Origin: Octopus sinensis
Taxonomy: Eukaryota
NCBI RefSeq assembly: GCF_006345805.1
Contig: NC_042999.1
Location: 121,086,001-121,150,000, forward strand
Direction of reading: 5' to 3'
DNA: 64,000 nucleotides
The position numbers and the translations under genes were made by a program. Every line of letters starts with the position of its first letter. The first letter of the stretch is position 1. The notes beneath the pieces are model-generated. The model saw only the letters and a program-made list of their open reading frames with translations, was not told the origin of the DNA and ran no database searches. Positions 389-61,239 of the stretch are shown piece by piece.

Positions 389-2744
389 CTATATATCAAA
401 ACATTCAAAGCTATGAAGAAACTTTAAGATTAAAATCTGGAGTTAAAATCTGAAGATAGTGTCAAACCAGATATGGGATAAACAGAGGTCTGTTACTGGC
501 AAATCATGTAAATCAGTACAACGGACAACCAGTAACCAAACCTGCAAACGCATTAACCTTGTTTGCTAAGAAGGTGAATTCTTAGAAATCCTTCGGAACG
601 ACAATCAAAGCTCGTCAAAGAAGGGTGAAATAATTCGGTATAATCAATGGTCATCCAATACTGACTAGGTGTACCATAACAAGACTTCAAGTAGGCAAAG
701 ATGCATCACAGTCTGCAGCCCATTTGTTGCAGTGGCTTGCCTTCCTTACCCGCTGTTTACTACCAAAGAATGCTACGGCAAAGCCTACTATCACTTAAAT
801 CTCTTGCAAGTAGCCCTAATAAATCATATCAACTTGTTAAAAAGGCACTGGATAAATCGTCGCCCGGATAACGAAGATTACGTTGGCTGTTCCCCACTCC
901 AAGCAGAAACAAGAATTTTACTAGAATACAAGACAGAGGGCCTTTATCTTTGCCAATAGAATGTCAGGACACTACTAGAGAGAAGGAAAACAGGCCAATT
1001 AGAATAGTATACCACGTGTGGCTCTTGATCTGGAAAGATATAGCAACCCTTTGTGAGATAGGACAGCGAAAATATGGTACTATCAAAGACATGAGGCATA
1101 TATTCTTGATAATACCATATTTTGGCATTAAATGTTGTTTATAAACCACAGGCCTGGAAAGATGCTAGTATAGTCCCCAATCCCAAGAAGGATAGCACTA
1201 ATGAATGCCGTTACTATCAACATTTTTCTACACTTGCTGGAAAGAACCTTGCAAAAGTGTTGCTAAACAGGCTGTAAGAAAATCACAGTCCTTAGCCTGT
1301 AACTCAATGTGGATCCAAGGAAGGAAAAGTGCATCATTGATACATTATTCTGTCTCTGTTAGATCCAGTTAAAAGTATAGCAGAACAGAGCATTGTATGT
1401 GGTATTCACTGACGTTACGAAATTGTAACGAAAATATGATTGTCGGTTACTAAGTATGACGGTTATATATAACGATATGGTGCATCAGATTAATGAATGA
1501 AGAACAATATTAATTGCTTGTTGAGATGGCTATTTTATTTATGCCATTAGTATGATAGTCGTTACACTATAGAAAATACAACTTCTTCAAGTTGCAGTAT
1601 ACAAGTTATTTGTTGATCTCGAATCCATTACATAGGTGGTAGATTCATCTGTGAGACACTACTACAGAGAAAGAGAAAGAGTAAGAAAGTCAAGGCAGAT
1701 ACAAAGAGTAAGAGTTGTATTGTCCCTCGAACAAAAAGGGATTGTTCTCCATTGATACCGAACAGAAGGAAGAAGGATGAGAGAGAAACGTGCTCTTGGT
1801 AGGTGCCGAGTGACTAAAGAGATGCCCCGGTCTTTGGATGTGTATTTATATTATTCATAACTAAATATAAGGTCGAGCTAAACAAAGCGTTTTTCCTCTA
1901 CATCAATTTTGACCTATATCTGATTTTTCAAAGCTCAAGAAGTCAGCTTATTTTCATAAGTCTCCTAGTGCAAAAGGCTAGAACAATGGGCCGAGGAATT
2001 GTTGAAAACTGTGGATTCAGTTTTGAATCCTGGTTCAGAAATTTGGTAGTTGTTCTCTACAAAAGCATCCGATACAGTAAGCTAGGCTTCAGTCTAAGCT
2101 AGGTATTCAGGTTTGAATGTCATGAAAAATTTCTTCTTGTCATAAAGTCGCTTCATGGTGACATAGGGGCTTCATTTATGCTGCTGAAAATCAGCTCTAG
2201 GCAGCTTGATGTTTCAGTGGGAATCACACAGGACTGCGTGTTAGTGTTATCATTGTTTTCACTTCTACAAATTCTTAATGAGTTATTCTGCAACTCAGTT
2301 GAAAGTATAAACATAGAGACACGATCTGATTTTGATCTACTGGAGTTATCACACCATAAGGTATGTCTAAGAGCGCACATATCTTAGTGAGAGAAATGTT
2401 GATTACTGACAATTTTACCCTAGTCTTCAATAACGAAGAGGAATGCACCGTTTGTTGATGGTTTTTTAGTAGTGCTACTTCAAAGCTCCATCTGAATATC
2501 AACATCCTGAAGAGTAGTGTTAGATGAGAGAACCTGAAAACACCACCATCGAATTTTGGTAGCAGCAAGCTATCTTGCCTACCTGGACGTTACAATCAGA
2601 AACGATGGATGACTCGGCGAAAAACTAGATCGCAGGATAAATAAGATGAACTCGGCGTTCAGAAGTCTGAGGTTAAGAGAGCCCAAATGAAGCAACTGGC
2701 ACGTTAGAACGAAAGTGAAGTGCAAATCTATCGAGCAACAGTCT

Positions 2745-3064
2745 TGGCACTCTGTCGGTTACGACGACAAGTGTTTTAGTTGATCAAATCGACGGAATAG
2801 CCAGCTCGTGAAATCAACGTGCAAGTCGCTGAGTAATCCACAGACACGCATACCCTTAACGTAGTTCACAGGAAGATCAGCATGGCATAAAATGTAACAA
2901 GGTTGGCCCTTTAAATTACAGGTACAGCTCATTTTTGCCAGCTAAATTGTCTGGAGCATCGTGAAATAAAATATCTTGATGAAACACACGACGTGCCACC
3001 GGGAATAGAACTCACAACCTTACGATCGTGAGCCGAATACACCCAACCACTAAGCCACGCGCCT
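2745..3064 (-). mobile_element. tRNA-derived SINE (core M1 + tail T1)
   Basis: Minus-strand head aggcgcgtggcttagtggttggg...gagttctattcccgg with Pol III A/B-box-like motifs; homologous to 41250-41570. Confidence 0.85.
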
Positions 3065-3168
3065 AGGTTTCCCAAGCGGTCAACATCAAAGAACTAACTA
3101 GGCTCGACGTAGTTTAATTTCGATGATCGGACACGAACCGACGCATTTAATGTGATATGGCCGTAAAC
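3065..3168 (-). pseudogene. 5S rRNA pseudogene, 3'-truncated, fused to a SINE head
   Basis: Reverse complement gtttacggccatatcacattaaatgcgtcggttcgtgtccgatcatcgaaattaaactacgtcgagcctagttagttctttgatgttgaccgcttgggaa is colinear with metazoan 5S rRNA from nt 1 to about nt 100; many substitutions; 3' end missing. Confidence 0.85.
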
Positions 3169-3505
3169 AATAGTATTACCTACATATTATACGGATAGAA
3201 GACATGGAAGTTACACAATAATGAGAGACCTGATACACATCATGAACATTATCTGGCTTAGGTTCAGCAATGTCCTTATTCTAGAAAAAGTATATGGGAT
3301 ATATTTGTAAAACGAAACCAATGCTTGTTTACACTCGGTTCCAAAGACGATTACTATTTCCCCGTCGGCTAACGATACGAAAATTCAGGGTACACCACTT
3401 CTAATATACAATGATGTGGTTAAATCCAAATTGAAACGGGACATTGATCCTCAAAACAAGATCACAGTGTCTTTGTAAGAAACTTATTGATACCCTAACT
3501 TGTTA

Positions 3506-3548
<43 letters not shown>

Positions 3549-4239
3549 TATGGGAAGAGTCATCGTCGATATCGACGGACCTATTTGGTATCGATATCAT
3601 GGCCACCTCTTGTTTTCTGAGCATTTCTGTACCTATGCGTATTCTAATGACATTGTAAAATGAATATCCTTCTCTTTTTCTCTCTCTCACACACGCATAT
3701 ACACGTGTGCGTGTGCGTACATAAGCACATACACACACACACACATGACTCTCCATTTAAATGTCATATTGACATACACAGTAATGAAATATATAATTTT
3801 CAAATTCCTATATATTTGTTCTATCGTCATGACTTTCTTTTTCTACTAAAGCTACATTTCGGTCATCCTTCGTTTCAAAATTAGTGTCAAGTGCGCTAAA
3901 CGTACGTGTCTCTTGACTATTTAAGCACGTATCTTCCTCTACTTCCATGCATGAATATTATTTATACGTACCCTTGATACCACACTTTCAATCTGCAATC
4001 ATTTAGGATCTTAAAACACAAACGAATTAGTCCCATTCAACATCTTCACATTCAACTGCACCAGAACAAAACTACATTCGGTACACATATTTATGTTATC
4101 TTGCACTCCACTTTCAATATGCATAAGTAATTCACAGTATTTCCAGAATACTCGCAAATATCAAGCCTCACAATTATCTCTCAAGATGAATTCTATGGTA
4201 GTGTTTCAGCATTAATTCTCAATTACAATATTGTTACAC

Positions 4240-5799: not shown

Positions 5800-6050
5800 A
5801 ATGCGCCCTTTTAAAGCCTAGTCAGGCTCATGGGCCCGGTTTCCCGGTTTCAATAGCGTATGTGTTCGCCAGCTGGACGGGACGCCAGTCCATCGCAGCG
5901 TTACTCATTTTTGCCAGCTGAGTGGACTGGAGCAACGTGAAAGGAAGTGTTTTACTAAAGAAGACAACGCGTCGCCCGGTCCAGGAATCGAAACCACAAT
6001 CTTACGATCCATGATGCTGCCACCCTAACCACTAAGCCACGCGCCTCCAC
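5800..6050 (-). mobile_element. tRNA-derived SINE (core M1 + tail T2)
   Basis: Same head and M1 core as 2745-3064; 3' part homologous to 12558-12665. Confidence 0.85.
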
Positions 6051-10671: not shown

Positions 10672-10972
10672 TGGCATTCTATTCGCTGCGACGACGATGG
10701 TTCCAGTTGACCCGATTAACGTAGTTCTTGGAGAGATTCAGTGTGACAAAGCTGGCCCTTTGAAATATAGGTACAACGGAAACAGGAAGAAAAAGTGAAA
10801 GAAAGTTGTGGGGAAAGAATACAGCAGGGTTCGCCACCACCCCCTGCTGGAGCCTCATGAAGCTTTAGGTGATTTTGGTCAATAAACATTCAGAACGTCC
10901 GGTCTGGAAATCAAAACCGCAATCCTCTGACTGTGAGAGCCCACTGCCCTAACCACTGGGCCATTGTGCCTC
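10672..10972 (-). mobile_element. tRNA-derived SINE (core M2 + tail T1)
   Basis: Tail homologous to 2745-2930; core homologous to 12665-12790. Confidence 0.8.
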
Positions 10973-18220: not shown

Positions 18221-21866
<3,646 letters not shown>

Positions 21867-22288
21867 GATAGATAGATAGATAGATAGATAGATATGTTTC
21901 TTTATTAGCCACACAGGGCTGCACACAGATAGAACAAATTACAAGGTAGAGCTTTTCTTTTGAAGGTATTAAAAAAAAAAAAAAAAAAAAAAAAAGGAAG
22001 GGGGAGTTCGATCAAAAGGGATCGTAAAAGGAGAGAAAGAGGACAAAAAGGGGGGTTAAAAAAAAAAAAAAAAAGGGGGGGGGGAGAGGAAAAAAAAATG
22101 ATCAATAGGATCGTTATCACAGAAATGTCAATATGAAGTGTAAGGGGAGGACAGGTGAGGTTTACCCGTGGAAAGAAAAGCCTGCGGAAAAGACCACGGT
22201 AACCTCGGTCAATGAAGTCACTTTTATATTTCTTTTTTTTTTTTTTTTTTTTTTGCAAATAAGCAACTCTCTGTTTTCGATTCTGGGT

Positions 22289-25200
22289 TCATAGGACTAT
22301 GCTCAAGGTGGCTTCGTCATTCATACGTGCCATTCTTGCTACATTCACCCATCTTTTTTTAAAACATTCGCTAGACAAAACTTGCCTCTCTACTCTCACT
22401 TTCCTTTTCAAGTGGTACTTGAAGAAGTTGATGAGAGATTGACCAGAGAGGAAAGTGTTTGTCTCCAATCCTTTCAGACGCGTCCACCAGATACATTCTT
22501 TCGCCATAGCCACAAGGATGATGAAAATAGCTCTTCCTTCCCGTTTGAAGGAAGGAGGCGTGACAATATTGACGATAGACTCAGCTGATAAACCGACTCG
22601 TCCCACACGTGACAGCAGTTGTTCGACATAAGCCCACAGGTCGGAAATTGTTGGACACTGAACGAGTGCGTGCAGAACGGTTTCGTCGCTCTGACCGCAT
22701 CTCGGGCAGGTCGCCCCGTGTTTCTCGAGCCGTGTCTGTAGAGCTTATCCCGAACGGGTAGCGCTTCTCGGTAGCACTGCCAGGCCAGGGATCTCTGGAA
22801 GTTGTCCATGGGCCCTGGCCCGAAAGTCGTCCCGAACAGGCGGGTCAGGTACTCCTCGTCGACGTCCAGGTTCGCCCCGAGCTCGTCGTCGTACCTCCCC
22901 TCCACTAAACCCCTATAGAATGCTTTGGTTGTGTTGAAGTCACTTAAGGTCGACCCAGGACGGCAGAGTTGCTTGAGAGCAACGCGACACTCGCGGTGCC
23001 ATTCGCCCTTCCTCGGCCTCTTTTTGATCCACGACTGCAGTTCGGTCATGGAGACGAGCTGCGGGAAAGCGTGCCTCACAAACGGCGACCCACCCTGTTC
23101 ACCGTCGTCTACATAGAGCCAGAGATGTCGCAGTCTCAGCGCGTGTCTGCGCATCATCAACCACGGCATGCCCAGCCCTCCTTTTAACGGGTGTTGACAG
23201 CAAATGGATCGCCTGACCATCGGGACGCATCCTTTCCACAAGAAGCGAAAGAGGATGCGTTGTAGTTTGGTGATGGTAGGGTCGGGACAAGGTACGACGG
23301 TCAGGCGGTAGTAGATGACGGACGCGATGTACGTGTTCGCCACCTCCGCTCGACCTTTTAGGGACAGTTTCCTCTCGGCCCATTGCCGGGCGAGAGTGAC
23401 CACCCTACTCGTTATCTCGTTCCAGTTCTTCTCCACTTGGAGGTCCGGACCAACCAGACCCCGAGCAACTCAACCGGGCCGTCGGTCCAGCGTCCCACGA
23501 CGGAGGCGCTGGTGGACGGCATGGGCTTGCTTCTCCAGGTGCCTAGTCGCAAGCCCACTGACTTTTCCCGGTTGATTTTCGCTCCTGTCACCGCTTCGTA
23601 GTTTTTCAGTGTCTCGCCGACCAGCTCGATGTGCTCGTGGCTAGACACTATGACGGTGACGTCGTCCGCGTATGCAGACACGCTCGTCCCGCATCCCAAT
23701 TCTCGCGGGATGCCCCTTAGAGTCGCCAGCTTCCGCAGTAGTGGCTCAAGAGTCAATACGTATAGAAGCGCCGAGAGGGGGCATCCCTGACGGACCGAAC
23801 GTGCAATGTCGAAAGGTCTCGATAGATGTCCATTTACGCGAATTACCGAACGGATGCCTCTGTACAAGGCAGCTATCCAGCCGCGGAAGACGGGACCGAA
23901 ACCAGCCGCTCTCAGGACTGCCTCCAAGTATCGATGGTCTACCCTATCAAAGGCTTTTGATTGATCCAAGTTGATCAGGCCCCACCCATGCCAGGTTCGT
24001 TAACTACCCTGTCTATGATGTAGCGCATCAGATGGAGGTTGTCATGGATGGTCCGGCCTGGCACGGCGCATGTTTGCGCCTTGTCGACCAGTTTCTCGAT
24101 GACAAGCGCCAACCTCTTGGCTAGCACCTTGGCCAAAATTTTCAAGTCTGCATTAAGCAGAGTGATGGGCCTAAAGTTATCTATTACATTTCCCTTGTTT
24201 AGATCTTTCTTCAGCAGTGTTACGGCTCCTCGGCTCACAAAACCAGGAATGCTCCCGTTTTGCTGCCAGTTGCAGTACACCGCCGCCAAGAGATCTCCAA
24301 ACAAGTCTGGCATACAATTGTAAAGCTCGTAGGGTAGACCATCCAAACCCGGTGATTTGTCCCTCGAGCATTCTGCCATCGCTTCCCGCACTTCCGCCGC
24401 CGTGATGGCACCTTCGCAGCACCCTGCCTTTCTTGTCGAGAGTCGTGGTAGGCTATGTAGGTAGGCACTGAAGTCCACCCTACGTTCTTGCCCTCCACTC
24501 GTTCCGAACAGTCGGGCAAAATGCTGCTGAAAGGCCTCACACATTTTACTTGGCTCGAGCAATTCGCGCCCCTGTTCATCTACCAGTGACCGAATGGTGG
24601 CTTTGTTGCCCTGTTGCGCGCCTCTGCCACCCGGGCCTCTCTCGCGGCTCCAACACCTTCGTTCCTTAGAGCACGCATCCTAGCTCTGACAGCACATCCT
24701 TCGTGTTTGGCGTTGAAGTGTTGGTCGAGGGCCAACCTCGCCGCCAAAACGTCGGATGCGATGCCGCTTCTAATTGCCTCTTCTAGCTTCTTAACTAGCT
24801 CACCCTCTACTCTATTTCTATCTATGGCTAGTGCTTTGCTGTACCTAATCGCTTCTGCTTTTACTGCTCTCTTGAGGGCAAACCACCATTTGTTGTTGAT
24901 GATGGCTCCCGTCAAAGCCCTCTTTACTAGTGTGCTAATCCGGTCTCTGAAAACTTGTCTCGATGGGAAAGACGCGTTTAGTTTCCAGTATCCGGGACCC
25001 TGCCTAAGTGTCTTACCTAAGTCTAGCGTACATGTCACAAGTTTGTGATCCGTGTAGCTGACTATGTGGAATTGTGGACATCCTATGCTATCTCTATCTA
25101 CTGTCCTACACAGTATCCTATCTAGATACGATCTCGACGACCCGATGCGGTTGCTCCATGTCCACGTTGGCGCATTCGGGTGGTCTAGTCGAAACCTGTC

Positions 25201-25757: not shown

Positions 25758-27760
25758 TTACTGCTCGAAAGTTTTTGCTTTCTCCTCCGTTGGTTTGTCC
25801 TCGAGAAGATCCCAGTACAGTTTCTTTGTGAGATATTTTTGGCATTTACCAACCGCACTGGGGAAAATGCCTTTGAGTGTGTGGTGCAGACTTTTGGAGA
25901 TGTGTATTATTTTGATGTGGTCTGGTGGTGTTGTGTATGGGTGGTTGTTTGTTTTTATGTCATCTTCTGTTATGTTTGTTTTTGATTGGATGTATTCCAT
26001 CAAATTTGTGTTTTTGGTGTCTATGGCTGTGAGCATGTTTGCTGTATATGTTTTTGTGGTGTTGGTGTGGCTGTTGTTTGCGTTGGGTTTTGAAATGTCT
26101 TCGGGAGATGTATTTCCCCCTGCTTTGTTCGTGTTTGCATTTGGTTTGGTTGTGTTTCTGCTCTTTATTTTCCTTCTTTTTGTAGCTATTTGCCATTCCT
26201 CACTGGTTTCGTCTTCCGACGAAATTTCTGAGGAATCAGAAGGGGGTAGGGGTATGTTGTGGCTTCTATGTATGTCTGTGTAAGTGGTTGTGTTGTTGTT
26301 TTCGTTGTTGTTGGTTGTTGAGTGTTTGTGTGTGTTGAGTGCGGTATAAGGGATGGGGGATCAGTTTGTGTGTGTTTTCTTTGTTTTTCTGTTCCTTTGG
26401 GTTTTGCTGTTGATGGTAGTGTTGGTATTTTTCCAGGTGTCGAGTGGTTTTTGGTTGATGACGGATTAGCTTGGTGTGCTTCTCTTGTCGTCTTCTGTGT
26501 TGATGGTGGTGTGGGTAGTAGAGCTTTTTTTCCGGAGTGCTTTGGTTGTGGTAGTGGTTGTTGTTGTTGCTCTTGGTGTGCAGTGGTTGGGCACGTCTTT
26601 TTCAAGTGTGTTTCGCTTCCACACAAATAGCAGCGTGGTCGCCTGCCCTCTACCACTATATAGAGTTTGTAGCCTCCTGGCAGTTCTATAGCGGTGGGTA
26701 TCTTCTCTCTTGCTGCTTCATCCAATTGAAGCAGGAATTCGATTGATTTGCCCACATAGTCTTTCTCTCCTAGAACCGCGATTTCCAGGATGTTTGTCTC
26801 TGACATTGTCTCTGACATTTCAAAGCAGATGGCAGAGACCACCCATTGTGTTTCGACATCAAATGGTATGTTTTTTATTTGGACTTTCGTGACCCTTTTG
26901 TTTAAATAGACTGGTATCATTACCAAGTCGTCCGAATGTAGCTCCAATGTGGAAAAACGTTTTGCTAAACTTTCGTTGAGGAAACGTACTTGGACTGTAC
27001 CAAATTTGTTTCCCCAACTGATATATTCCTTGGAGTCCCATACAGGACGAAGGCATTTATCGATTTTTTCCTGCGGTGCATTTTCTGTTCTTCTTGTTTT
27101 TTTGTTTATTACTTTATAAATTATTGTTTTTTTTTGCGTGTTTTCCACGATGTGTTGTGGAATATGAAGGTGCAATTTGTCTCCTTCTTTGGAGAAGAGT
27201 GCCTTTGTGCGGTTTATCTCTTGTGTGGTGAATGTTACAATTGTTCTTTTTTGTTTTGTTACGTCCGCAAAATTCGTTTTGAATTTGGCAGTAGAAGTGT
27301 TAATTGTGGCAGTGTTAATTGAAGTCATGGTAGTGGTGTTGGTGTTGGCGGTATTAGCAGCAGAAGGCTTGGATGTAGCATTTGACGTCGTAGTAGTGGT
27401 GTTGGTGTTGGCGGTGTTGTCTTTGGTAGGCGGCTTTGTGCCAATTTCGTTGTTGTTGTTGTTGGTGGTGATGGTGGTGGTGCTGGCATTCATGTTTTCG
27501 TTTGTATTCATTTTTGAAATCCCTTTCTCTGTCCCTTTATCATCAACAAGTGGTGTGGGGAGTGAGGGGAAATCTAAGTTAATGTCTTTGGTCGCGGCGA
27601 TGGTGAATGCGACGTTAGATTTGTTGTTGTTGTTGTTGGTGGTGGTGATGGTGGTGACAGCGGTGTTCACGCTGCGATGTTTAGCAGCTAGTGGTAGCAA
27701 TAGTGTTTTGCTACCGTTCTGCATGACTGGCGGGCTAGCCACGTGGTTTCTAGTTGCCAT
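25758..27760 (-). CDS. Tx1 ORF1 (gag-like nucleic-acid-binding protein), with an apparent frameshift near 26300
   Basis: ATG at 27760 (the track starts at an upstream TTG); RRM-like KVQIKNIPFDV; zinc knuckle CYLCGSETHLKKTC; the second frame (SSEDETSEEWQIATKRRK...) runs to the stop at 25758. Confidence 0.85.
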
Positions 27761-27981
27761 TTTCAAAATGAAAAATGGCTAAAAAACCCACGAAAGTTTT
27801 GAAAGTTTTTTTGTAATTTCGCCCATACAGGGGCGGAATTCTACGTGAATAATTCTCAGGTTTTTTAGTGAATGAATTTGCACAACGATTAAAACAAAAT
27901 ATTTGACAACAAGGAGTTTTAAACATGTAAAAGTGGCCAACTTACTTGGAGCCGATATGACTAGCGTCCGTCCATTGTGAT

Positions 27982-41158: not shown

Positions 41159-41249
<91 letters not shown>

Positions 41250-41251
<2 letters not shown>

Positions 41252-41570
41252 CATTCCGCCGGATACGACGATGATGGTTCCAGTTGATCCGGTCAACGGA
41301 TCAGCCTGCTCGTGAAATTAACTTGCAAGTGGCTGAGTACTCCACAAATACGTCTACCCTTCACGTACCTCTCAGGGAGATTCAGCGCGACACAGAATCT
41401 GACAAGGGTGACCCTTTGAAATACAAGTACTACTCATTTTTGTCAGGTGAGTGTACTGGAGCAAGGGGAAATAAAGTGTCCTGCTCAAGGACACAATGTG
41501 TTGTCGGGAATTGAACTCACAACCTTACCACCGTGTGCCAAATGCACTAACCACCAAGCCACACGCCGCC
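41250..41570 (-). mobile_element. tRNA-derived SINE (core M1 + tail T1)
   Basis: Colinear with 2745-3064 over its whole length. Confidence 0.85.
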
Positions 41571-44402: not shown

Positions 44403-45320
<918 letters not shown>

Positions 45321-47604: not shown

Positions 47605-50600
47605 CAGTAGTTTTAATTTTATAGGTGCTTTCACTTCACTACCGAGCGCAGCTCTGTGTGCCTTAGGTATGTGCTGTGATTTGTTGTAATGTTCTGATGG
47701 TTATTGTATGGAAAGTGTTCTGCGTAGATTGTGTGCAGTGCCTACTAGTGCAATTTTCTGTATGTTATATGTGTTTGTAAGTCCTGGTGTTTTTGTTATG
47801 TATTTGTCTGAATATTTTTTATCATGCCTAATGTACCTACTATGATAGGAATTGTTTCTGTTTTCAGATTCCACATTCTGGTTACCTCTATTTCCAGGTC
47901 TTTGTATTTTGAAAGTTTCTCCATTTCTTTTAGATACACGTTGTCATCTTCCGGTATTGATACATCAATTAGAAAGCATTTTTTTCTTCATGATCTCTGA
48001 CAACTATATCTGGTCTGTTGGCCTTAATTTCTTTATCTGTGTGTATCGGCATATCCCAGAGTATGGTTGCTTTCTCGTTTTCTGTGACCTTTTCCGATGT
48101 GTGCCTATACCATCTTTTTTCTGTTGTTATTCCATAATGTTGGCAGAGCTTGCAGTGTATGTAGGATCCAACTCTGTCATGTCTGTGAATATATTCCTTC
48201 TTAGTCAGGACTGGGCAGCCAGAGATAATATGATTTATTGTTTCTTGTCCATCTCCACATATTCTGCATATTTCTTTTCATTACATGTTTTGGTAACTTC
48301 TGGTGGTCTTGTGCTGCAATTAAAAATCCCTCTGTCTCTGCTTTGAGTCCTGAGCTTCTCAACCATTGCTGAGATTTTTCTTTGTCCATTTCTTTTGCAT
48401 TTAGTTTAGTCCAGTACTTACCATGAAGGGGCTTTTCTTGCCATCGTTTTATCATGGTTCGTTGCTGTTCTATTTTTAGTTTGGATTTTATTTGTTTTAT
48501 AGCTTTTGTTGTTTCATCATCTTCTTCTTCTTCTTCTTCGTATTTATTAGGTGGTATGATTTCTTGTTTGTATTTGTCAGCTACATTAAATACTGAGAAC
48601 AGTTTTTTGTTTTGCTCGTGTTTTGCCGCTATTTGTGTCAGTTTTCCTTCCTTCTGAAGTAGATATTTTTGCAGTCCTATGGTGGTTATTTTATAGTAGT
48701 TTTCCAGCTGTATAAGGCCTCTACAACCTTCTATACGTTGTATATATAGTCTTTCTATGTCAGATTTTGGGTGATGCATCCTAGATCCTGTCATTATTTT
48801 TCTTGTTTTCCATCTATTTTGGTCAGTTCATTTAGTGTCCAGTTAAGGATATATTAGCTGTAACTTATAACTGGGACAGCTAAAGTGTTAATACCTATTA
48901 TCTTGCTTTTAGCATTGAGCTCTGTGTTTAGTATTGATCTAACTCGTCTATAATATTCTTTTTTTTTATTTTGTCTTTCATTTCTGTGTGTTGTGTCTTA
49001 TCTAGCTCATGGATTCCTAAGTATTTGTAAGTTTGGCTTTGGTCTAATTCTTTTATTTCATTGGTTTTATCTAGTGTGATGTTGCTACTCTTAACTAGTT
49101 TTCCTCTTTTCAGGGTTACTTTGGCGCATTTTTCTAATCCAAATTTCATATCTATTTCTTTGGTAAATCCATGAACTGTCTTTAATAGTGTTTCCAGCTG
49201 CTTGCCATTTGCAGCGTATAATTTTAGGTCATCCATATATAAAAGGTGACTGATCGTTTTGCCGTAACATTTATATCCGCATCCAGTTCTATTTTGCATA
49301 ACAGATAGAGGTGACAGTGCCAAACAGAAAAGGAGTGGAGAGAGGGTATCTCCCTGGAATATTCCTCTTCTAATGGGGATGGCTTTGGTTTTCATAAGTC
49401 CCTCTTTTGTTTGGAGCTGTAGCACTGTTAGCCATTTATTCATAGAGTGCCCTATGAATTTTATAATTGTTGGTGCTACTTTGTTAATGGCTAGTGTTTC
49501 GAGGATCCATGTGTGGGGGATGCTATCAAACACCTTTTTGTAGTCGATCCAGGCCATACTGAGGCCTTTCTTCTTTCTGTGGCTTTCTTCAGTTATGGCT
49601 TTATTAATCATTAGTTGATCTTTACAGCCATATGAGCCTTTGCGGCATCCTTTCTGCTCTTCTGGAAACAGGTTGTTTTCGTCCAGGTGCTTGTTCAGCC
49701 TTTGCGATATCACTGCAGTAAATGCCTTGAACATAGTAGGGAGGCAGGTTATTGGTCTGTAGTTTTCTGGTTTTTCTGTTTCATTTGATTTGGGAATTAA
49801 GATGGTTTTCCCCTGCGTGAGCCATTCAGGCATTGTCTCTGGCTCTGCTAGTACTTTGTTAAAGTTTTCAGCCAGCTTTTTGTGCATTCCTGTTAGATAT
49901 TTCAACCAGAAGTTGGGGATCTTGTCATGCCCAGGTGCCTTCCAGTTGCTTAGTCTTTGCAGTGCCTGGGTGACCTCTTCAGTTGTTATGGGGGTCCAAT
50001 GTTGTTCAGATGCCGAGTTTGTTATTCTGATACTCCTTTTTTTGGTGGTTCGTTCGCCGACCATATTTCTCCCCAGAATTCTTCCAATTCTTCTGCCGTT
50101 GGTGCTGCAGTGACTTCTATTTTATTTTTTCCCAGTTCTTGGAAGAACTTTTTGGGGTTAGAGTTGAACTTTTTGTTTTCTTCAAAGAAGCGTTGGCGTT
50201 TCTTGTACCGGCGGATCCTTTGTGCTTTGGCAAGGATATCTTGCTTCAGCTTTTCTTTTATTTCAGGCAAATCTTTCTCTGTGATGTTATATTTGCGGAG
50301 TATTTTTGTTCTCTTTTTGTTGCTCAGTAGCGTTGATTGTTTGCTGATTTCATTAAGAATCGACAGGTCTTTTCTAATTTTTTTTATTTTGCTTTGGATG
50401 TTATTTATCCACAGGGTTTGTTTGGGTGGTGGTACTCCTGTTTGGGCGGGTTTGGGTGAGTATCCAGCTTCTTTTGTGGCTGCAGTGGCTGCTCCGTATA
50501 TTAGGTTATTTAGCTCAGTGATATCACTTTTTTTTTATTCAGTGGCTATCAGTTCAGTGACGGCTAGGTTTATGCTGTTTATAATAGGTGTTGTTATTTT

Positions 50601-51574
50601 GGTTATTTTGATTCTTGGGAGGTATGGTCGGTGGTCCATTTTGAGCTCTGTGGTTTTCAGTTCTTTGATTATTTTATTTTTTATATTATCATAATCATTA
50701 GGCTCCCCTTCGTTGTTTACATCGTGTTTGTTGGGAATGTTGCGTTTGTCTTCGTGTTTTACAATTTCAGTGTTTATATTATTGGGCATTGTTGTGTGGC
50801 TTCTATCTACATTTTCCTGGTGTATGTTTTCTTTTAGGTGTTCTATTTCTATTTCTGATATTTTTTTGTGTTGAGAATGTATCTTCGTACGTTAGCTAAT
50901 TTATTAGGGTTCATTGCTGTATCCAAGTCTATATCTCTATTATTTTCCTTCCATATTTTATATGTATGTGTTGTTGTATTTTCATTTTTTGGGTAGAGTA
51001 CTGCTGTGAAGTATGTGTTTAGGATAGAAATGTATTCCTCACGTGTCCATTTACGTATTTTGGGTTTTATTTGCGGGACATGAGGTACAACGTCCGGCCC
51101 ATTATTTTGACGGTCGTCATTTTCGTAGGGTACCGGTCCGTTTATTTCTGTTGTCACATTATTTCGCACGTGTAGTTTTTCGTACATTTTTTGTTGTAAG
51201 TTTAATGTACGTACCGCTCGATTGTTATTCTTGGGTTGAATAGTATCGGTGGTATTTAATTTCTTCGTAGTTCCTTTGTACATGGTGTTTGGGGTCGGAG
51301 ATGATCGTGATGTTCCACGCATGTTTACATGTGTTGCGTTAGAGGCGGAGATGATATCGAGTCAAAATACATAATTTCGTTTCGAAAATAGTAATAAATT
51401 TCAATTAGTATTACTTACTCGGATACAGTCCAATTCTTTGTTAGTAAAACTTTGGCTCCATAGGATGTCCTTGTTTTCGATGTTTGTGGATAGATTTCGG
51501 AGCTCTGAATTTTCCTTCTTACATCTTAAACGTCCCCGGTGTTCTCCTCCTTAAACATCCCCGGTGTTCTCCTC

Positions 51575-56883: not shown

Positions 56884-56932
56884 ATATATATACACAATAC
56901 ATGCATGTGTATATGTGTAAGTCTATATGTAT

Positions 56933-57028
<96 letters not shown>

Positions 57029-61097: not shown

Positions 61098-61142
<45 letters not shown>

Positions 61143-61150
61143 ATTTGTAT

Positions 61151-61181
<31 letters not shown>

Positions 61182-61239
61182 CATACATACATGCATACAT
61201 ACATACATACATACATACATACATACATACATACATACA

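What the first reader, a model, noticed from the sequence alone, without database searches (positions are those of the whole stretch)
2736..3178. 5S rRNA head fused to a complete tRNA-SINE, inserted as one unit
Seen: on the minus strand, 5S nt 1 to about 100 runs directly into the first base of a full tRNA-SINE. The composite interrupts an RTE reading frame exactly at YRA(T/I)VL, and that codon block occurs on both sides (caacagtcttg 2736-2746; caatagtatta 3168-3178; 8/11 identical), like one decayed TSD. Established: LINE RTs make template-switch chimeras (e.g. U6-L1), and 5S-derived SINEs exist. Inference: either a one-off SINE-to-5S template switch or a member of a 5S+tRNA double-Pol III-promoter SINE subfamily.
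Basis: partly seen in the sequence, partly recalled or inferred. Interest (0 to 1): 0.7.

Follow-up and report, generated by a model that had tools for sequence, protein, structure and literature searches.

The report
5S rRNA fused to SINE retrocopy
A decayed 424-base retrocopy, made of the first ~105 bases of 5S ribosomal RNA joined directly to a whole tRNA-like SINE, sits inside an old LINE remnant; this kind of fusion is already known as the way 5S-headed SINE families arise, so it is a neat example rather than a new phenomenon.

Summary
On the minus strand, window 3168-3064 is a significant 5S rRNA match (RF00001, 46 bits against a cut-off of 38; 43.2 bits without the SINE; model positions 1-106). 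It runs without a linker into a 319-nt tRNA-like SINE (3063-2745). Two 5S-less relatives in the window (41567-41249 and 6046-5904) define the SINE's ends. Both flanks belong to one decayed LINE reverse-transcriptase frame: ...IYRATVL | insert | (T)IVLPT(L)LYG*KTWKL. They carry a same-phase direct repeat, CAACAGTCTT / CAATAGTATT (8/10). There is no separate repeat around either part. The best reading is one target-primed insertion of a 5S::SINE fusion, made by reverse-transcriptase template switching from the SINE RNA's 5' end onto 5S rRNA.

I could not resolve whether this is a one-off chimera or a copy of a composite 5S+tRNA SINE family. The host genome is absent from every searchable collection, and all searches for a second copy were empty. 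The repeat alone is weak (p about 0.045). The RTE clade and the tRNA origin are not confirmed by models. Close precedents exist (AmnSINE1-type Deu-SINEs, HaSE3, CoeSINE5, 5S/L1 chimeras). I rate it a new member of a known kind, of moderate interest.

The parts
3064..3168 (-). 5S rRNA-derived segment: 5S nt 1 to about 106, missing the 3' terminal ~14 nt. It covers the region of the type-1 internal promoter (box A, IE, box C), now decayed.
   Evidence: RF00001 46.0 bits. 43.2 bits for model positions 1-106 when the SINE is excluded. It is the only 5S hit in the window.
3061..3066 (-). Fusion junction ...GGGAAACCTA|GGCGCGTGG.... It has no linker, no A-run and no target-site remnant. The 1-3 nt (A)GG are assignable to either part, which is possible microhomology.
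   Evidence: Sequence. Homology to the other SINE copies begins at GGCG, window 3063. The 5S model alignment ends at 3064.
2990..3063 (-). tRNA-like head of the SINE, with box A TGGCTTAGTGG (3057-3047) and box B-like AGTTCTATTCC (3012-3002).
   Evidence: The box A/box B pattern is shared by exactly three loci in the window, 0 expected. ARAGORN calls it only at a relaxed threshold. There is no Rfam tRNA hit and no cloverleaf in the consensus fold.
2745..2989 (-). SINE body and 3' end (...TCGTCGTAACCGACAGAGTGCCA). It is complete relative to copy B and has no A-tail or microsatellite tail.
   Evidence: 75% identity over 320 nt to 41567-41249, with the alignment running to the last base.
2736..2745 (+). 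Left copy of the putative target-site duplication, CAACAGTCTT. It encodes (A)TVL of the host LINE.
   Evidence: 8/10 match to 3168-3177; frame.
3168..3177 (+). Right copy of the putative target-site duplication, CAATAGTATT. It encodes (T)IVL in the same codon phase. Its first base overlaps 5S nt 1.
1122..2744 (+). Host LINE reverse-transcriptase remnant upstream of the insertion. It has many stops and frameshifts and ends ...RTKVK/QIYRATVL.
   Evidence: Window 1122-1274 is 53% identical to P0126 (E 7.7e-4 in a library of 1.8 billion proteins). P0126 is RVT_1 by Pfam. The remaining motifs were read by eye.
3169..3500 (+). Host LINE remnant downstream of the insertion: PT(L)LYG*KTWKL..., followed by a (CA)n run.
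   Evidence: Translations. The motif assignment is from general knowledge of LINE RT C-terminal regions and was not model-tested.

Best explanation
A single retrotransposition event inserted a 424-nt fusion into an older LINE copy. The fusion is 5S rRNA nt 1 to about 106 joined head-to-tail to a full-length tRNA-like SINE.

Proposed mechanism: a partner LINE reverse transcriptase nicked the target and primed on the SINE RNA's 3' end. It copied the SINE RNA to its very 5' end. It then switched template onto a 5S rRNA molecule at about nt 106 and copied that to nt 1. The switch may have been helped by 1-3 nt of GG microhomology. Second-strand cleavage about 9-10 bp away produced the flanking duplication.

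The switch happened either in this very event, giving a dead-on-arrival chimera, or once in a progenitor. In the second case the progenitor's 5S type-1 promoter then drove Pol III transcripts starting at 5S +1, and the SINE 3' end let the LINE mobilise them, so this would be one copy of a composite family. My split is about 0.45 family, 0.35 one-off, and the rest other origins.

Shown: the anatomy, the orientation, the exact boundaries, the single flanking repeat and the continuity of the host frame. Inferred: the RNA-level template switch, the identity of the reverse transcriptase, and any promoter activity.
For: - The 5S match is significant and independent of the SINE.
- The SINE boundaries are defined by two 5S-less copies.
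- The parts are directly abutted in the same orientation.
- The host LINE frame stops at the SINE's last base and resumes at 5S nt 1, with a same-phase 8/10 repeat. Removing the insert and one repeat copy restores ...IYRATVLPT(L)LYG.KTW....
- No repeat flanks the 5S alone or the SINE alone (best 4/9 and 5/8). No remainder of the 5S 3' end lies beyond the SINE.
- About 7 broken pairs in the 5S alignment and 2/10 mismatches in the repeat suggest similar decay of both.
- Published precedent for this mechanism and architecture: PMC4758252 (citing Nishihara 2006), PMC3272025, PMC5786205, bioRxiv 10.1101/2025.02.02.635956.
Against: - The repeat alone is weak: p about 0.045 under a permissive null.
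- That (T/I)VL occurs only once in an intact element rests on general knowledge of LINE RT C-terminal motifs. No full-length homologue could be retrieved.
- Template switching cannot be told apart from read-through transcription of a SINE that had inserted into a 5S gene at a source locus.
- No second copy, empty site or orthologous locus was available.
- In published human 5S/L1 chimeras the 5S piece is often antisense and truncated at nt 46 or 90 (bioRxiv 10.1101/2025.02.02.635956), unlike this one.
Confidence: 0.75

Rival explanations
1. Refinement A, family member. This locus is one copy of a multi-copy composite SINE family: 5S head, then intact tRNA-like head, then body and tail. It would be transcribed from the 5S type-1 promoter and mobilised through the SINE 3' end. 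That is the stage inferred for the ancestor of AmnSINE1-type elements.
For: - The 5' boundary is exactly 5S nt 1, which is where a 5S-promoter-driven Pol III transcript would start.
- The retained 5S piece (1-106) spans the whole internal control region.
- Families of this architecture are documented (PMC4758252, PMC3272025, PMC5786205).
- Base-rate argument (inference): a random 64-kb window is far more likely to contain a member of a family of hundreds to thousands of copies than one of a handful of unique chimeras.
Against: - There is only one copy in 64 kb, against two or three 5S-less relatives.
- No other copy was found anywhere, but the host genome is not in the searchable data.
- Type-1 promoters of retroposed 5S copies are thought to be weak without upstream signals (PMC3272025, citing Kapitonov and Jurka 2003).
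Confidence: 0.45
2. Refinement B, one-off chimera. The template switch from SINE RNA to 5S rRNA happened during this very insertion. The product never amplified.
For: - The junction is unique in the window.
- Stand-alone SINE copies exist nearby.
- The structure matches the rules of LINE-mediated chimeras: small RNA at the 5' end, same orientation, one TSD (bioRxiv 10.1101/2025.02.02.635956).
Against: Such events are rare per insertion in the one system where they have been counted (253 candidate small-RNA/L1 chimeras in that study). Chance discovery in a single window is therefore a priori unlikely. Nothing in the sequence distinguishes this reading from refinement A.
Confidence: 0.35
3. The fusion arose at the DNA level at a source locus. 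A SINE inserted into a 5S gene at about nt 106 in the same orientation. Pol III then started at 5S +1 and read through into the SINE, a form of 5' transduction. That transcript was retrotransposed here. There was no template switch.
For: It gives the same final anatomy. The 5S internal promoter (up to about nt 97) would stay intact in such a source gene, and its terminator would be displaced (inference; anatomy).
Against: It needs an extra, specific event. Published authors favour template switching for comparable elements (PMC3272025, PMC4758252, PMC5786205). No source locus is available to check.
Confidence: 0.1
4. Two independent insertions occurred at this locus. Either a 5S retropseudogene landed exactly at the 5' edge of a resident SINE, or a SINE landed in a resident 5S pseudogene and a deletion followed.
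For: The outer repeat is only 8/10 and borderline significant on its own, so the single-TSD argument is not watertight.
Against: - No repeat flanks either part alone.
- No 5S 3' remainder lies downstream of the SINE.
- The SINE starts at its first base and the 5S at its first base.
- The host frame is continuous across the pair once one repeat copy is removed.
Confidence: 0.05

Closest known systems
AmnSINE1 / 5S-headed subgroup of Deu-SINEs (Nishihara, Smit and Okada 2006, as summarised in PMC4758252)
   Same: [quoted passage not shown] A template switch of the LINE RT is the proposed origin.
   Different: [quoted passage not shown] Here the tRNA-like head is complete and only one copy is known.
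- The central domain is different (Deu was not identified here) and the host is different (vertebrates there; an unidentified AT-rich, microsatellite-rich animal genome here).
- I could not open the primary paper.
HaSE3 of Helicoverpa armigera (PMC3272025)
   Same: [quoted passage not shown] It has an RTE-type 3' tail, and a template switch from SINE RNA to 5S rRNA is proposed.
   Different: In HaSE3 the 5S replaces the tRNA head and the central domain, so only body and tail are shared. Here the switch is at the very 5' end of the SINE, and the whole tRNA-like head is kept behind the 5S.
CoeSINE4/CoeSINE5 and other RTE-related SINE3 elements (PMC5786205)
   Same: Paired tRNA-headed and 5S-headed SINEs share the same LINE-derived 3' parts. 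A template switch adding a small-RNA head is the proposed birth mechanism.
   Different: Those have either one head or the other, not both in tandem. Their bodies are demonstrably RTE UTR-derived, which I could not show here (not significant).
LINE-1-mediated chimeric retrocopies (U6/L1, 5S/L1; Buzdin et al. 2003 as cited in PMC3272025; bioRxiv 10.1101/2025.02.02.635956)
   Same: Two RNA-derived parts are inserted in one event with one TSD, with the small RNA at the 5' end.
   Different: - The 3' partner here is a SINE, not a LINE.
- The enzyme here is presumably a non-L1 (RTE-like) LINE, and there is no poly(A).
- Human 5S/L1 chimeras are reported as often antisense and truncated at nt 46 or 90. 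This one is sense and runs 1-106.

Membership tests
5S rRNA (Rfam RF00001) | Covariance-model score at or above the curated gathering score | tested here: met
   46.0 bits against 38. 43.2 bits with the SINE head excluded.
5S rRNA (Rfam RF00001) | Full-length molecule with an intact helix I, as in a functional gene | tested here: not met
   The model match is 1-106, flagged 3'-truncated. About 7 non-canonical pairs appear in the alignment. It is a 5S-derived fragment, not a gene.
tRNA-derived SINE (SINE2) | Internal Pol III type-2 promoter: box A and box B at tRNA-like spacing near the 5' end | tested here: met
   GTGGCTTRGTGG-N(25-45)-TTCNATTCC is found at exactly the three SINE copies, 0 expected by chance.
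tRNA-derived SINE (SINE2) | Head recognisable as a tRNA by a tRNA model | tested here: not met
   ARAGORN at default settings finds none. There is no RF00005 hit at E up to 10 on copy A or copy B. The consensus fold shows no cloverleaf. Only relaxed ARAGORN runs give Val/Arg-like calls. The tRNA origin is therefore likely but rests on the promoter boxes.
tRNA-derived SINE (SINE2) | Interspersed copies with different flanks | tested here: met
   Copies at 3063-2745, 41567-41249 and 6046-5904 have unrelated flanks.
tRNA-derived SINE (SINE2) | 3' tail shared with a partner LINE | tested here: inconclusive
   The best match of the SINE tails to the region 3' of the host LINE scores 23, against a shuffled mean of 17.5 (sd 2.2, max 28). 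No intact LINE 3' end was available.
5S-headed composite SINE family (SINE3; AmnSINE1/HaSE3-like) | 5S-derived head at the extreme 5' end that includes the internal control region | tested here: met
   5S nt 1-106 sits at the 5' boundary of the inserted unit.
5S-headed composite SINE family (SINE3; AmnSINE1/HaSE3-like) | Multiple copies sharing the same 5S-body junction, each with its own flanks and TSD | tested here: inconclusive
   There is one copy in the 64-kb window. There were 0 hits in metagenome, prokaryote-genome and viral collections and in the protein collection. The host genome is not represented there (best identity 55%).
LINE-mediated template-switch chimeric retrocopy | Two RNA-derived parts, same orientation, directly abutted, flanked by one TSD, with no TSD around either part alone | tested here: met
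   The TSD is 8/10 and in phase, with a standalone p of about 0.045. Nested repeats are absent.
RTE-clade LINE (the interrupted host element) | Reverse-transcriptase domain | tested here: met
   Window 1122-1274 matches the RVT_1 fragment P0126 at 53% identity. Pfam itself finds nothing on the stop-ridden conceptual translation.
RTE-clade LINE (the interrupted host element) | Placement in the RTE clade by RT phylogeny or architecture (single ORF, APE plus RT, short UTRs) | not testable with these tools
   No full-length homologue was retrieved. The copy is too decayed. The motif wording resembles RTE-type elements only from my memory.

The most novel reading that the evidence does not exclude
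The locus is a copy of an undescribed invertebrate SINE family that still carries two complete Pol III promoter modules in tandem: a 5S type-1 head in front of an intact tRNA-type head. That would be the 'frozen intermediate' stage postulated, but not observed, for the origin of AmnSINE1-type 5S-headed SINEs. It would allow a direct test of which promoter drives such a composite.
Probability: 0.4. Interest if true: 0.5.

Novelty: new member of a known kind. Interest (0 to 1): 0.35.

Why it matters
SINE families are thought to acquire new heads when a LINE reverse transcriptase jumps from a SINE RNA onto a small Pol III RNA. Published cases are mostly inferred from family consensus sequences, after later remodelling.

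This locus shows the primary product. The jump occurred exactly at the SINE's first base, the whole tRNA-like head is still present behind the 5S, and a single target duplication flanks the pair. If more copies exist, it would be a new composite SINE family caught at the double-promoter stage. If not, it documents 5S capture by a non-L1 LINE machinery acting on a SINE template. Either way it illustrates a known mechanism rather than revealing a new one.

Tried and rejected
**Searches for more copies**
1. I translated the junction-spanning open frame and searched the 5.8-billion-protein collection. No candidate was found.
2. I searched a degenerate junction pattern in the JGI metagenome contigs: 0 hits. 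A SINE-head pattern gave 42 loci, but none contains the SINE body. They are probably real tRNA genes or chance matches.
3. I searched a 28-specified-base pattern from the conserved SINE 3' region in prokaryote genomes and in viral contigs: 0 hits each.
4. I tried to sample the host genome through its LINE proteins. The best hit to the intact RT ORF 48928-50064 is only 55% identical. The contig fetched for one hit (L043) shares nothing with the window except 66% RT similarity and has no SINE copy. An exact look-up of the 524-aa window ORF found nothing on record. I conclude the host genome is not in the collections.

**Searches for an intact homologue of the host LINE, to prove the empty site**
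- tblastn with 120 RT proteins found nothing.
- The word-indexed search had no hit at E <= 0.001.
- A 51-aa window ORF returned only short fragments.
- A regex for the Y.A..L..LYG.E.W motif in the fetched proteins found none.

**Leads rejected**
- A PDB search gave a weak engrailed-homeodomain match (E 5e-5 to a tandem construct, about 0.03 to single domains). I reject it as an artefact of an out-of-frame stretch. The true RT frame there reads SYLAYLDVTIRNDG*LGEKLDRRINKMNSAFRSLR.
- The SINE head mimicking the 5S 3' end, as a long-microhomology guide for the switch: it adds only 2.8 bits to the 5S score. I keep only 1-3 nt of possible microhomology.
- Similarity between the SINE tail and the sequence 3' of the host LINE is not significant.
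- The published RTE insertion signature (a TSD starting with T about 10 nt after a T-run, PMC6007223) is not evident here and cannot be judged from one site.
Full report
**What is in the sequence**

Read on the minus strand, window 3168-3064 is a 5S rRNA-derived segment. The Rfam 5S model scores 46.0 bits against a gathering score of 38, with E 2e-6 for the whole 64-kb window searched against all families. It is the only hit in the window above any gathering score.

The 5S alignment ran on into the next element. I therefore re-scanned 3064-3180 alone. The match persists at 43.2 bits, covers model positions 1-106 and is flagged 3'-truncated. So the 5S piece is real. It begins at nt 1 (window 3168), ends at about nt 106 (window 3064) and lacks the last ~14 nt. 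About seven base pairs are non-canonical in the alignment, as expected of a decayed pseudogene-like copy.

**The SINE**

BLAST of the region against the window finds two relatives. One is 41567-41249 (minus strand, 75% identity over 320 nt, E 1e-57). The other is 6046-5904 (minus strand, 73%).

In both relatives, homology to the finding starts at GGCG(C/T)GTGGCTT, which is window 3063. For the first, it runs to ...GAGTGCCA, which is window 2745 (alignment A1). Upstream of that point the two relatives carry unrelated sequence, not 5S. The SINE in the finding is therefore complete at both ends, and the same SINE type exists without a 5S head.

All three copies share a perfect box A (TGGCTTRGTGG) and a box B-like motif at tRNA spacing, with 0 matches expected by chance. 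The tRNA origin itself is not confirmed by models:
- ARAGORN at default settings finds nothing.
- The Rfam tRNA model gives no hit at E up to 10 on copy A or copy B.
- The consensus fold is not a cloverleaf.
- Only relaxed ARAGORN thresholds give Val- or Arg-like calls.

'tRNA-like, type-2-promoter SINE' is the safe description.

**The junction**

The sequence is ...GGGAAACCTA|GGCGCGTGG.... It has no linker, A-run or target remnant. One to three bases, (A)GG, could belong to either part. The 32-nt junction is unique in the window.

**The flanks**

The insert lies in a decayed LINE reverse-transcriptase remnant on the plus strand.
- Window 1122-1274 is 53% identical to a database fragment (P0126) that Pfam calls RVT_1.
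- Further motifs are visible by eye in the three-frame translations, for example SYLAYLDVTIRNDG*LGEKLDRRINKMNSAFRSLR and then RTKVK.
- After a frameshift the frame reads QIYRATVL, ending at 2746.
- Beyond the insert it reads (T)IVLPT from 3167. After a 1-bp deletion it reads (L)LYG*KTWKL.

Removing the insert and one copy of the repeat gives ...IYRATVLPT(L)LYG.KTW.... This has the spacing of the Y-x-A-x-V-L-x-x-L-L-Y-G-x-E-x-W block that follows the RT domain in many LINEs. That spacing is established knowledge recalled from memory. I could not retrieve an intact homologue to show it.

The two repeat copies are CAACAGTCTT (2736-2745) and CAATAGTATT (3168-3177). They match at 8/10 positions and sit in the same codon phase. 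Against randomly paired sites in the window, with the same freedom of offsets and lengths, a repeat this good occurs 4.5% of the time. The repeat alone is therefore weak. The same-phase duplication of three codons within a continuous frame is the stronger argument.

No comparable repeat flanks the 5S alone (best 4/9) or the SINE alone (best 5/8). No remainder of the 5S 3' end lies beyond the SINE. I did not verify that the host LINE belongs to the RTE clade.

**Interpretation**

The anatomy is that of a single target-primed insertion of a 5S::SINE fusion. The two RNA-derived parts have the same orientation. The small RNA is at the 5' end. The SINE's own 3' end sits at the priming side. One target duplication flanks the whole unit.

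The most economical origin is a template switch. The LINE reverse transcriptase copies SINE RNA to its 5' end, jumps onto 5S rRNA at about nt 106 and copies to nt 1. I tested whether the SINE head mimics the 5S 3' end well enough to have guided the jump. It adds only 2.8 bits to the 5S score, so only 1-3 nt of microhomology can be claimed.

A rival origin gives the same product and cannot be excluded here. In it, a SINE inserted into a 5S gene at a source locus and was then read through from the 5S promoter. Sequential insertions at this locus are unlikely, for the reasons given under the flanks.

**One-off or family**

I could not settle this.
- The window has one composite and two to three 5S-less relatives.
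- Every external search for another copy was empty: the junction peptide, the junction pattern and SINE head in metagenome contigs, and the SINE 3' core in prokaryote genomes and viral contigs.
- These negatives carry no weight, because the host genome is not in the searchable data. An intact RT ORF of the window has no hit above 55% identity. A fetched 'relative' contig shares only distant RT similarity. An exact look-up failed.

From base rates (inference), meeting a family member in a random window is more likely than meeting one of a few unique chimeras. I put about 0.45 on a family, possibly a small one, about 0.35 on a one-off, and the rest on other origins.

**Comparison with what is known**

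The architecture and the mechanism have clear precedents.
- A subgroup of Deu-SINEs (AmnSINE1) arose when a 5S sequence was fused to the 5' end of a tRNA-derived head. It later lost part of the tRNA region (PMC4758252, citing Nishihara et al. 2006).
- HaSE3 of Helicoverpa is described as a 5S/tRNA-SINE chimera with an RTE-type tail. Its authors attribute it to a switch from SINE RNA to 5S rRNA (PMC3272025).
- CoeSINE4 and CoeSINE5 are a tRNA-headed and 5S-headed pair on RTE-derived bodies (PMC5786205).
- LINE-1 makes U6/L1 and 5S/L1 chimeras (bioRxiv 10.1101/2025.02.02.635956).

What is slightly unusual here is that the entire tRNA-like head is retained behind the 5S. This is the unremodelled primary product.

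The organism is unidentified. It has an AT-rich (64% A+T) and extremely microsatellite-rich animal genome. From memory only, the 5S variant looks more like arthropod than vertebrate or mollusc 5S. That is a lead, not a result.

**Verdict**

This is a new member of a known kind, of moderate interest (0.35). A junction search in the source genome would settle the family question in minutes.

Noticed in passing
window 41249-41567 (-), tail to about 41160: A full-length 5S-less copy of the same SINE type, 75% identical. It is followed directly by long (TA)n and (GA)n runs, whereas the composite copy has no microsatellite tail. RTE-type SINEs are reported to end in microsatellite-like repeats (PMC6007223).
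   Followed up: partly
window 5830-6046 (-): A different SINE shares the tRNA-like head and a ~35-nt core (TTGCTCCAGTCCACTCAGCTGGCAAAAATGAGTA) with the other two but has an unrelated 3' half. This looks like module exchange between SINE families in this genome. A 34-nt core fragment also lies at 10742-10775.
   Followed up: partly
window about 1490-2150 (+): The host RT remnant contains about 650 bp that does not fit between the FDTV-like and GxxQGC-like RT motifs. It may be another old insertion or a rearrangement. No repeat of it was found elsewhere in the window.
   Followed up: no
window 18735-25038 (-) and 26186-27766 (-): Two adjacent or nested copies of another LINE family have long open RT and C-terminal frames that are near-identical between copies. 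There is also a 526-aa ORF with a CCHC knuckle (CYLCGSETHLKKTCP) that looks like a LINE ORF1. These appear much younger than the element hosting the finding.
   Followed up: no
window 48201-51322 (-): A third LINE with an intact 378-aa RVT_1 ORF. Its best match in 5.8 billion proteins is only 55% identical, which shows that the source genome and its close relatives are absent from the collection.
   Followed up: partly
whole window, e.g. 56931-57012, 61121-61208, 44866-44985: Very dense (TA)n, (CA)n and (GA)n microsatellites generate more than 150 sub-threshold Rfam 'miRNA' matches (mir-3149, mir-297 and others). All are below their gathering scores and are low-complexity artefacts.
   Followed up: yes
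window about 2520-2700 (+), frame starting at 602: There is a weak engrailed-homeodomain similarity in an out-of-frame translation of the RT remnant. I judge it spurious, because the neighbouring frame carries the canonical YLG...RI.KA..AF..L RT-downstream motif.
   Followed up: yes
window 3559-3579 (+): TCATCGTCGATATCGACGGA, just beyond the (CA)n run that follows the host LINE, resembles the SINE tail TCATCGTCGTATCCGGCGGA. The score is within the range of shuffled controls. It would be worth checking against intact LINE 3' ends if the genome becomes available.
   Followed up: partly
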